This document shows, piece by piece, positions 24,095 to 24,316 of a DNA stretch of 64,000 bases (its first letter is position 1; every line of letters begins with the position of its first letter). The notes under the pieces were generated by a model. That model searched no databases. It worked only from the letters and a program-made list of their open reading frames with translations, and had not been told where the DNA came from. The stretch comes from Scyliorhinus canicula (taxonomy: Eukaryota). Location of the stretch: assembly GCF_902713615.1 (NCBI RefSeq), contig NC_052166.1, forward strand, positions 18,227,731 to 18,291,730, in the 5' to 3' direction. Both the position numbers and the translations under genes were made by a program.

Positions 24095-24316
24095 CAGCTC
24101 TGAGGAAGGCAGTGGGCAGTTCCAAAGGCACCACAGGATCCTGGTTAGTACCTCCATCCCCACAGCTGGACAGGACGACGATCCTGGCCTTCAGTTCGAG
24201 TTCAAGAATCTCCGGAATGGTTAATAAATAAGAACGTTCCTCCACAAGTTCCCCAGCAGCTGGAGGTGGATGTGGGGTAAAGACTAGGACACCATCCTCC
24301 CAGCTCCCGTATGTTG
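24095..24316 (-). CDS. TPR-CHAT gene exon with active-site region ((A)TYGSWEDGVLVFTP...LLTIPEILELELKARIVVLSSCG...LPTAFLRA)
   Basis: Not in the ORF track; read by hand. Acceptor ttctgatattgcAG, donor GTaagt, phase 1 to 1. LT..EI..L.L.A..VVLS.C and L..AFL.AG are hallmark CHAT motifs. Confidence 0.9.

What the first reader, a model, noticed from the sequence alone, without database searches (positions are those of the whole stretch)
24162..24311. CHAT active site: catalytic His replaced by Tyr, Cys retained
Seen: across the 31376/24316 junction the protein reads VVHIA-T-Y-G (Tyr codon 24309-24311), and later IVVLSS-C-G (Cys codon 24162-24164). Known: active CHAT peptidases use H.a.HG and VVLS.C as the His-Cys dyad. 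As recalled, human TTC28 keeps the His and lacks the Cys, which is the reciprocal loss. Inference: a pseudoprotease or substrate trap, or altered chemistry. Functional complementarity with TTC28 is speculative. TAC is one transition from CAC, so conservation of the Tyr is the key test.
Basis: partly seen in the sequence, partly recalled or inferred. Interest (0 to 1): 0.7.

Follow-up and report, generated by a model that had tools for sequence, protein, structure and literature searches.

The report
Shark TTC28-like CHAT domain lacking catalytic histidine
A catshark gene related to human TTC28 encodes a caspase-like CHAT domain whose catalytic histidine has been an aromatic residue (Tyr or Phe) since before sharks and chimaeras split, while the catalytic cysteine is kept, so it is most likely a conserved, expressed non-cutting "pseudoprotease".

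Summary
Minus-strand exons 31595-31376 and 24316-24095 splice to read VVHIATYGSWEDG ... IVVLSSCGDG, with Tyr at TAC 24311-24309 and Cys at TGT 24164-24162. Spliced cDNA contigs from two runs carry this junction, and no run shows a variant at the Tyr codon.

The gene is "tetratricopeptide repeat protein 28-like". The window's spliced exons are identical to residues 248-1033 of the Scyliorhinus canicula protein.

Profile alignment puts the Tyr in the column of the proven catalytic His of solved CHAT proteases (H585 of Scalindua TPR-CHAT, H862 of DdvA). The Cys falls on C627/C907. Among 42 non-family, mostly unnamed metagenomic CHAT domains fetched here, 39 have His there.

The Tyr is present in nine elasmobranch species and three hemichordate gene models. 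It is Phe in Callorhinchus and Nematostella. The Cys is invariant in these proteins.

The CHAT core is the best-conserved part of the protein. Other unidentified intron-containing loci have lost the Cys instead, or both residues.

Best reading: an ancient, selectively maintained non-catalytic CHAT module used for binding or scaffolding. A catalytic role for the Tyr hydroxyl is unlikely because Phe replaces it.

The recalled reciprocal state of human TTC28 could not be checked with these tools. Another first-reader note on this window (s1-213866) gave the same gene span.

The parts
60700..60851 (-). Exon (TPR region), equal to S. canicula TTC28-like P0017 residues about 248-298. It is the first exon of the gene inside the window.
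   Evidence: tblastn and splice search. Pfam TPR hits.
54119..54290 (-). Exon (TPR region).
   Evidence: The junction translation is identical to P0017.
46090..47166 (-). Large exon (TPR repeats and linker), P0017 residues about 356-714.
43729..43914 (-). Exon at the start of the CHAT domain (…LLIVPDKHLIQ).
   Evidence: The CHAT profile starts here in the orthologues.
41789..41951 (-). Exon (CHAT domain, lineage-specific insert region).
40723..40889 (-). Exon (CHAT domain). It is followed by a GC-AG intron with donor GCAAGT.
   Evidence: Only this exon end gives a 788-residue open translation matching P0017 at 786/788.
31376..31595 (-). Exon A of the finding. It encodes CHAT strands up to …MTVVHI plus the first base of the Ala codon. 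The His codon of the conserved non-catalytic 'VVH' lies at 31382-31380.
   Evidence: Pfam CHAT E 2.1e-5. The cDNA loose end joining it to 24316 is.
24095..24316 (-). Exon B of the finding (222 nt, in-frame if skipped). It encodes ATYGSWEDG … IVVLSSCGDG … PTAFLRAG.
   Evidence: Pfam CHAT E 1.1e-4. cDNA contigs X5 and X6 cover exactly 24094-24317 with spliced continuations.
24309..24311 (-). Tyr codon TAC (Y962 of P0017), in the position of the catalytic His of CHAT proteases.
   Evidence: Alignment column shared with H585 (7x8a_D) and H862 (8rot_B). 39 of 42 non-family CHAT domains have His here. No read variant.
24162..24164 (-). Cys codon TGT (C1011 of P0017), in the position of the catalytic Cys.
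   Evidence: Aligned to C907 of DdvA and C627 of Sb TPR-CHAT. Invariant in all orthologues.

Best explanation
The window carries eight exons of the small-spotted catshark 'TTC28-like' gene, which encodes a TPR-repeat protein with a CHAT (caspase-like, clan CD) domain. In this domain the general-base His of the His-Cys dyad is replaced by Tyr, while the nucleophile Cys and the rest of the scaffold are kept (the Gly after the His position and the VVLSxC strand).

The replacement is not a recent slip. An aromatic residue (Tyr or Phe) occupies this site in all cartilaginous-fish orthologues examined and in hemichordate and sea-anemone relatives. It is embedded in a family-specific, invariant [Y/F]-G-S-W motif.

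Shown:
- the homology of the position;
- the conservation of the substitution;
- the splicing and transcription of the exon;
- the strongest purifying selection falling on this part of the protein.

Inferred: the domain no longer cleaves peptide bonds. It probably acts as a non-catalytic module, a remodelled aromatic-lined former active-site cleft that binds a partner or holds the TPR array in a defined assembly, as other pseudoproteases of the caspase fold do. The Cys would be retained mainly as part of an invariant structural strand.
For: - Sequence and splice.
- Gene identity: the window's spliced translation matches P0017 (NCBI: TTC28-like isoform X2, Scyliorhinus canicula) at 786 of 788 residues. 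The two mismatches are intron-derived residues at the 5' edge.
- Domain: Pfam CHAT at E 2e-31 to 7e-36 on the full orthologues.
- Fold: the AF2 C-terminal half has pLDDT 70-88. The strand holding TVVHIATYG and the strand holding IVVLSS both end at the key residues. Foldseek's best hits are DdvA, SAVED-CHAT, separase, Csx29 and then caspases.
- Position homology: a profile search of the PDB aligns the Tyr column with H585 of Sb TPR-CHAT and H862 of DdvA, and the Cys column with C627 and C907. These are the published catalytic dyads (PMC9729208; PMC11506125; Csx29 H615/C658 in PMC10028731; SAVED-CHAT H375/C422 in bioRxiv 10.1101/2023.06.23.546230).
- Canonical state: 39 of 42 non-family CHAT domains fetched here have His at this column.
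- Conservation: Tyr in Heterodontus, Scyliorhinus, Heptranchias, Pristiophorus, Hypanus, Leucoraja, Rhinoraja, Chiloscyllium and Hemitrygon. Phe in Callorhinchus. Tyr in the Saccoglossus (two models) and Ptychodera proteins. Phe in Nematostella. Cys in all of these.
- Selection: residues 851-1050 are the most conserved 200 residues of the protein among seven chondrichthyan sequences (0.84-0.88 identity per window against 0.2-0.8 elsewhere). A related species differs at 6 bases in exon B, with only 2 amino-acid changes, both in a loop.
- Dyad not under family-wide constraint: related genomic loci with the same intron position have His with no Cys (L001) or Tyr with no Cys (L002/L003).
Against: - No biochemical test exists. 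Inactivity is inferred only from loss of one dyad residue.
- The nucleophile Cys is invariant from Nematostella to sharks. That could mean it still does chemistry.
- The AF2 model was built from only 9 sequences, and its coordinates could not be inspected. A substitute base near the Cys therefore cannot be excluded structurally.
- The N-terminal half of the domain model is unreliable (pLDDT below 50).
Confidence: 0.63

Rival explanations
1. The domain is still a working cysteine protease. It would use the retained Cys with a non-canonical general base (another residue, a partner protein's residue, or water), and the aromatic residue would shape the S1 pocket.
For: - The Cys, the Gly after the His position and the whole VVLSxC strand are invariant from cnidarian to shark.
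- The active-site region is the most conserved part of the protein.
- DdvA shows that CHAT active sites can be completed in trans by another protomer (PMC11506125).
Against: - The only His conserved across the whole family, H958, is the 'VVH' His that also accompanies the catalytic His in canonical CHATs. It aligns to Thr581 in Sb TPR-CHAT and Asp858 in DdvA, so it is not a spare catalytic residue.
- Other His residues of the core (TPHPP, FYHHFY) are confined to cartilaginous fishes.
- Relatives have lost the Cys outright.
- In characterised clan CD enzymes the dyad is required. C627A/S abolishes TPR-CHAT activity (PMC9729208).
Confidence: 0.17
2. The Cys is kept for a cysteine-dependent but non-proteolytic role, such as redox or electrophile sensing, a covalent substrate trap, or metal binding. 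The aromatic residue would shield the thiol.
For: - The Cys is invariant in the Tyr/Phe background across all named members.
- Extra Cys residues cluster next to it in several members (SCCYG, SSCCSC).
Against: - The neighbouring strand residues are equally invariant, so conservation of the Cys is not exceptional.
- Members without the Cys exist.
- There is no direct evidence of any kind.
Confidence: 0.12
3. The Tyr is an artefact or a private change: a sequencing or assembly error, an allele of one individual, or decay in a dying pseudogene.
For: TAC is one transition from CAC.
Against: - The same codon is present in cDNA contigs of two other samples and in a DNA contig of a related species.
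- Tyr or Phe appears in ten independently sequenced cartilaginous-fish genomes.
- The reading frame is open and spliced across 786 residues.
- The mRNA contig is 5 kb long.
Confidence: 0.01
4. The catalytic His was mis-assigned. The real catalytic His would be the one in VVH four residues upstream, so the dyad would be intact.
For: That His (H958) is invariant in every family member.
Against: - In canonical CHATs both His residues are present (vvHlAtHG), and the second one aligns with the experimentally defined H585 and H862.
- The first aligns with Thr in Sb TPR-CHAT and Asp in DdvA (PMC9729208; PMC11506125).
Confidence: 0.03

Closest known systems
TTC28 / TPRBK (human Q96AY4, mouse Q80XJ3)
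   Same: [quoted passage not shown] TTC28 is by far the best Swiss-Prot fold match to the modelled CHAT domain (E 1e-15 to 1e-14). NCBI names the shark gene 'TTC28-like'. A coral-genome paper names TTC28 as the human TPR-CHAT protein and states that the roles of its domains are not understood (PMC12314368).
   Different: Identity over the CHAT domain is only 20-22%. The shark protein has 1,813 residues against 2,481, so it is a distant paralogue and not the orthologue. It was found here in cartilaginous fishes, hemichordates and a cnidarian, but in no named bony vertebrate.
Active CHAT proteases: Csx29/TPR-CHAT (Craspase), SAVED-CHAT, DdvA, separase
   Same: They share the Pfam family, and the caspase-like fold is matched by Foldseek. 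They share the TPR-plus-CHAT architecture, the catalytic Cys in an LSxC motif and the Gly after the His position.
   Different: The catalytic His (H585, H615, H375, H862, H2003) is Tyr or Phe here. There is a family-specific invariant G-S-W after it. The shark protein also has a roughly 70-residue insert in the N-terminal half of the domain and a conserved C-terminal region of more than 300 residues with no Pfam match.
Pseudoproteases of the caspase fold, such as c-FLIP, the pseudo-protease domain of separase and C. elegans 'putative inactive caspase B' (own knowledge; the last also appears)
   Same: These keep the caspase-like fold under selection after losing a dyad residue. They act by binding or regulating rather than cutting.
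   Different: Those examples usually lose the Cys or both residues. Here only the His is lost, the Cys is retained over a very long time span, and the domain belongs to the CHAT branch. No CHAT pseudoprotease turned up in the papers searched.

Membership tests
CHAT domain (Pfam PF12770; caspase-hemoglobinase fold, clan CD) | Significant match to the family profile. | tested here: met
   The window exons score E 2.1e-5 and 1.1e-4. The full orthologues score E 2e-31 (P0001) and 4e-32 (P0002).
CHAT domain (Pfam PF12770; caspase-hemoglobinase fold, clan CD) | Caspase-like alpha/beta fold resembling separase or Csx29. | tested here: met
   The AF2 C-terminal half has pLDDT 70-88. Foldseek's best PDB hits are DdvA, SAVED-CHAT, separase, Csx29 and caspases, at probability 1.00 for the CHAT/separase hits and 0.93-0.99 for the caspase and MALT1 hits. 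The N-terminal half of the model is unreliable.
CHAT domain (Pfam PF12770; caspase-hemoglobinase fold, clan CD) | Catalytic His in the h-h-H-h-a-x-H-G motif. | tested here: not met
   Tyr (TAC 24311-24309) occupies the column of H585 and H862. It is Tyr or Phe in all orthologues, against His in 39 of 42 non-family CHATs.
CHAT domain (Pfam PF12770; caspase-hemoglobinase fold, clan CD) | Catalytic Cys in the v-v-L-S-x-C motif. | tested here: met
   IVVLSSC aligns to C907 of DdvA and C627 of Sb TPR-CHAT. It is invariant.
CHAT domain (Pfam PF12770; caspase-hemoglobinase fold, clan CD) | Peptidase activity. | not testable with these tools
   This needs recombinant protein and substrate or probe assays.
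TTC28 orthologue | TPR array plus C-terminal-half CHAT architecture, with TTC28 as the nearest named protein. | tested here: met
   Pfam TPR and CHAT hits. TTC28 of mouse and human are the best Swiss-Prot fold hits.
TTC28 orthologue | One-to-one orthology (high identity, similar length, shared synteny, presence across vertebrates). | tested here: inconclusive
   CHAT identity is only 20-22% and the length is 1,813 against 2,481 residues. Named vertebrate hits are all cartilaginous fishes. Neither synteny nor a tree that includes TTC28 proper could be made.
Pseudoprotease (non-catalytic homologue kept by selection) | Loss of at least one essential catalytic residue at a securely aligned position. 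| tested here: met
Pseudoprotease (non-catalytic homologue kept by selection) | The gene is intact, expressed and under purifying selection. | tested here: met
   The spliced frame is open. Spliced cDNA contigs exist. The CHAT core is the most conserved segment.
Pseudoprotease (non-catalytic homologue kept by selection) | Demonstrated lack of catalysis. | not testable with these tools
   This needs a biochemical assay.

The most novel reading that the evidence does not exclude
The catshark gene may be the vertebrate survivor of an ancient metazoan TPR-CHAT lineage (cnidarian, hemichordate, cartilaginous fish) that has kept a nucleophilic Cys without its partner His for more than half a billion years. 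In that case the Cys, in an aromatic [Y/F]-G-S-W pocket, would perform a His-independent function. Candidates are covalent capture of a substrate or ligand, redox sensing, or catalysis completed in trans by a partner. The lineage would have been lost from bony vertebrates.
Probability: 0.15. Interest if true: 0.7.

Novelty: new variant of a known kind. Interest (0 to 1): 0.4.

Why it matters
Animal TPR-CHAT proteins (TTC28 and its relatives, hugely expanded in corals) have no known biochemical mechanism. A securely aligned, deeply conserved replacement of the catalytic His argues that at least this branch works without proteolysis.

That tells experimenters to look for binding partners rather than substrates. 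It also gives clean mutants to test: Y962H, Y962F and C1011S.

The finding also flags a vertebrate gene that appears to survive only in cartilaginous fishes, which is useful for reconstructing gene loss after the vertebrate genome duplications.

This is an incremental result. Pseudoproteases are common, and the gene is already annotated, though uncharacterised.

Tried and rejected
- A PDB sequence search with exon B alone found nothing. A family-only profile aligned only the Cys half. A broader profile was needed to span both motifs.
- Three attempts to fetch TTC28 proper or bony-vertebrate orthologues failed.
  - The P0001 CHAT region returned only cartilaginous fishes plus two unnamed proteins.
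  - The full-length family alignment was swamped by bacterial TPR proteins.
  - The Saccoglossus CHAT region returned only hemichordates and bacteria.
  - The claim about human TTC28's residues therefore stays unchecked.
- Literature searches for TTC28 with CHAT or protease found only two coral-genome papers.
- The Atlas feature search added nothing beyond 'CHAT'.
Distances from the Cys to candidate bases could not be measured.
- The exon after 24095 is not in the window, so the last third of the CHAT domain was studied only in the orthologue P0017.
- Rejected explanations:
  - Sequencing error or private allele.
  - Mis-assignment of the catalytic His to the VVH histidine.
  - A catalytic role for the Tyr hydroxyl, because Phe stands in Callorhinchus and Nematostella.
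- The source organisms of loci L001-L003 and of several fragment proteins could not be identified.

Full report
**What is in the sequence.**
On the minus strand, an exon ends ...ACA GTT GTG CAC ATC G followed by gtaag, with its last exon base at 31376. After ...ttgcag, another exon starts at 24316 with CA ACA TAC GGG AGC TGG. Spliced together they read TVVHIATYGSWEDG. The Tyr codon TAC is at 24311-24309. Further along, the same exon reads RIVVLSSCGDG, with the Cys codon TGT at 24164-24162. Each exon alone matches Pfam CHAT PF12770 (E 2.1e-5 and 1.1e-4).

**The junction and the codon are real.**
I laid contigs of four public runs on 24000-24430.
- Contigs of X5 and X6 (same species, samples other than the likely assembly source) cover exactly 24094-24317.
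- On one side they run on into the sequence of the end of the 31376 exon. On the other side they run on into a downstream exon encoding ASTVLMQIK. They are therefore spliced cDNA; the X6 contig is 5,010 nt long.
- No alternative base is listed at 24309-24311 in X5 or X6, nor in X10, a DNA contig of a related species that differs at 15 other letters across the 393 bases it covers.
- X18 covers the Cys codon without change.
- In that relative, exon B has 6 base differences that cause only 2 amino-acid changes, both in the PHPPPAAG loop.

**Which gene it is.**
- An exhaustive HMMER search of 1.84 billion representatives with exon B found 16 proteins.
- The best are annotated 'tetratricopeptide repeat protein 28-like' from Heterodontus francisci (P0001) and Callorhinchus milii (P0002).
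- A word-indexed search added Scyliorhinus, Heptranchias, Pristiophorus, Hypanus, Leucoraja, Rhinoraja, Chiloscyllium, Hemitrygon, Pristis and Mobula.
- Splice-aware mapping gives eight exons in the window: 60851-60700, 54290-54119, 47166-46090, 43914-43729, 41951-41789, 40889-40723 (GC-AG intron), 31595-31376 and 24316-24095.
- Their translation matches the Scyliorhinus canicula protein P0017 at 786 of 788 positions. The two mismatches are intron-derived residues at the 5' edge. The window is therefore the small-spotted catshark or something indistinguishable from it.
- This span agrees with another first-reader note on the window (s1-213866).
- The exon that follows 24095 is not in the window.

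**Is the Tyr really at the catalytic His position?**
The evidence says yes.
- I built a profile of the C-terminal half of the CHAT domain from three family members and 23 non-family, mostly unnamed metagenomic CHAT domains (A3). I verified that P0017 Y962 shares a column with His in 22 of the 26 rows, and that C1011 shares a column with Cys in all 26.
- Searched against the PDB, this profile aligns that His column with His585 of Scalindua TPR-CHAT (7x8a_D) and with His862 of the anti-sigma factor DdvA (8rot_B). The Cys column aligns with Cys627 and Cys907 (residue numbers counted from the printed alignments).
- These are the published dyads:
  - H585/C627, equivalent to separase H2003/C2029, with C627A/S inactive (PMC9729208);
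  - H862/C907 in DdvA (PMC11506125);
  - H615/C658 in Desulfonema Csx29 (PMC10028731);
  - H375/C422 in SAVED-CHAT (bioRxiv 10.1101/2023.06.23.546230).
- In an independent HMM-based alignment of all proteins fetched, 39 of 42 non-family CHAT domains have His at this column.
- The upstream His of VVH (H958) is a different conserved position. It coexists with the catalytic His in canonical CHATs and aligns with Thr in Sb TPR-CHAT and Asp in DdvA.

**Fold.**
- An AlphaFold2 model of P0017 735-1105, built from a 9-sequence alignment, is poor in its N-terminal 156 residues. It is confident (pLDDT about 70-88) over the half that holds both motifs.
- TVVHIATYG forms a strand ending at the Tyr-Gly, and IVVLSS forms a strand ending just before the Cys, as in caspase-fold enzymes.
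- Foldseek's best PDB matches are DdvA, the SAVED-CHAT filament, human, yeast and worm separase, Csx29, and then caspases and MALT1.
- Against Swiss-Prot models, the best matches by nine orders of magnitude are mouse and human TTC28 (E 2.6e-15 and 1.1e-14, 20-22% identity, human residues 1354-1718). Roc-COR-CHAT proteases and separases follow.

- The site is Tyr in nine elasmobranch species spanning sharks, skates and rays. It is Phe in the chimaera Callorhinchus. The Cys is present in all of them.
- By general knowledge these lineages diverged roughly 270-420 million years ago.
- The same HIAT[Y/F]GSWE motif with a retained Cys occurs in the Saccoglossus kowalevskii (two models) and Ptychodera flava proteins (Tyr), in Nematostella vectensis (Phe), and in several unnamed assembled proteins.
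- G963, S964 and W965, directly after the site, are invariant across the nine aligned family members and are absent from the non-family CHATs fetched.
- Among seven chondrichthyan sequences, residues 851-1050 are the most conserved stretch of the whole 1,813-residue protein. Identity there is 0.84-0.88 per 50-residue window, against 0.5-0.8 in the TPR region and 0.2-0.6 in the tail.
- The substitution is therefore old, fixed and embedded in a strongly constrained surface.

**The dyad varies elsewhere in the family.**
Two fragment proteins from the first search trace to genomic loci of unidentified organisms that share the same intron position, between ...VIH[IL]G and the next exon.
- L001 reads LASHGCW ... 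VVLNVGYG (His, no Cys).
- L002/L003 read ATYGSW ... VVMSTGYT (Tyr, no Cys).
- Another fragment has Met at the site.

No named animal member seen here has both His and Cys. Different lineages having lost different dyad residues fits a family whose conserved function is not catalysis.

**Interpretation.**
- The most likely reading (about 0.63) is a pseudoprotease. The CHAT fold would be kept as a binding or assembly module attached to a TPR array, with the former active-site cleft remodelled by an aromatic residue and the invariant Trp.
- Residual proteolysis with an unconventional base (about 0.17), or a Cys-dependent non-proteolytic role (about 0.12), cannot be excluded. The Cys is invariant in the named members, and I could not inspect model coordinates.
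- Conservation gives no family-wide substitute His. Apart from H958, the His residues of the core are confined to cartilaginous fishes.
- Sequencing error, private allele or pseudogene decay are refuted.

**What could not be done.**
All three word-indexed homologue searches failed to return TTC28 proper, and the fold search gives no residue alignment.
- The idea of functional complementarity with TTC28 therefore has no support here.
- The apparent absence of the gene from bony vertebrates rests only on negative searches.

**Novelty and score.**
- The gene is annotated but uncharacterised.
- In the papers searched I found nothing on a CHAT domain lacking its His, or on the mechanism of animal TPR-CHAT proteins. 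One paper states that most metazoans have one or two TPR-CHAT genes and that the domains' functions in TTC28 are not understood (PMC12314368).
- This is a new variant of a known kind: a pseudoenzyme form of the CHAT domain. It is well supported at the sequence level and moderately interesting.

Noticed in passing
window 5909-9070, 16750-21319, 54909-59665, 61341-64000: There are four very large minisatellite arrays: 33 bp x 96, 32 bp x 143, 24 bp x 198 and 30 bp x 89 copies, at 87-93% match. They lie in or beside introns of the TTC28-like gene.
   Followed up: no
window 5165-5719 (+): A 185-codon open frame on the opposite strand carries a RING finger (Pfam zf-RING_2 E 4.8e-7). It lies downstream of exon B. 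The next TTC28-like exon is beyond the window, so this frame is probably inside the following intron of at least 24 kb.
   Followed up: partly
window about 34476-38357 (-): A Gypsy-type LTR retrotransposon sits inside the 40722-31596 intron. It has gag with a zinc knuckle, a protease (LLDSGS), reverse transcriptase/RNase H and integrase frames. Another first-reader note (s1-213879) concerns its primer site.
   Followed up: no
window about 13233-15354 (-): LINE-like frames (endonuclease and reverse transcriptase, 388 and 359 codons) lie downstream of the CHAT exons. Many short SINE-like copies giving ...HSPKMCRLGGLAMLNCP-type frames are scattered through the window.
   Followed up: no
window 40717-40722 (-), the intron donor after the exon ending at 40723: This intron uses a GC donor (GCAAGT) instead of GT. 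Only this exon end restores the reading frame that matches the S. canicula protein.
   Followed up: yes
P0025 (Pristis pectinata isoform X2), residues about 300-310; window exon 24095-24316: The sawfish isoform model reads ...LTVVHI-G-ASTVLMQIK, which is exactly exon B skipped. Exon B is 222 nt with the same phase at both ends, so skipping is in-frame and would delete both the Tyr and the Cys. I do not know whether this is a real isoform or a gap in the assembly.
   Followed up: partly
P0017 residues 1100-1420 (not in the window): The region after the CHAT domain is conserved from shark to Nematostella, with invariant columns such as G1211, F1212, F1214, Q1215 and C1287. It has no Pfam match and may be an undescribed domain.
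   Followed up: partly
P0048 and P0050 (unnamed assembled proteins, 1,075 and 1,079 aa): Two CHAT proteins outside the animal family also read HLATYG at the catalytic His position, with an otherwise non-family-type LSACQTG Cys motif. His-to-Tyr replacement has therefore happened more than once.
   Followed up: no
P0135 (unnamed, 2,167 aa, 155-kb ENA contig): This is a long TPR-CHAT protein with an intact HIAAHG ... VVLSCCYSG dyad. Its Cys motif resembles the hemichordate SCCYG form. Its origin is unknown, and it could be a canonical-dyad relative of the animal family.
   Followed up: no
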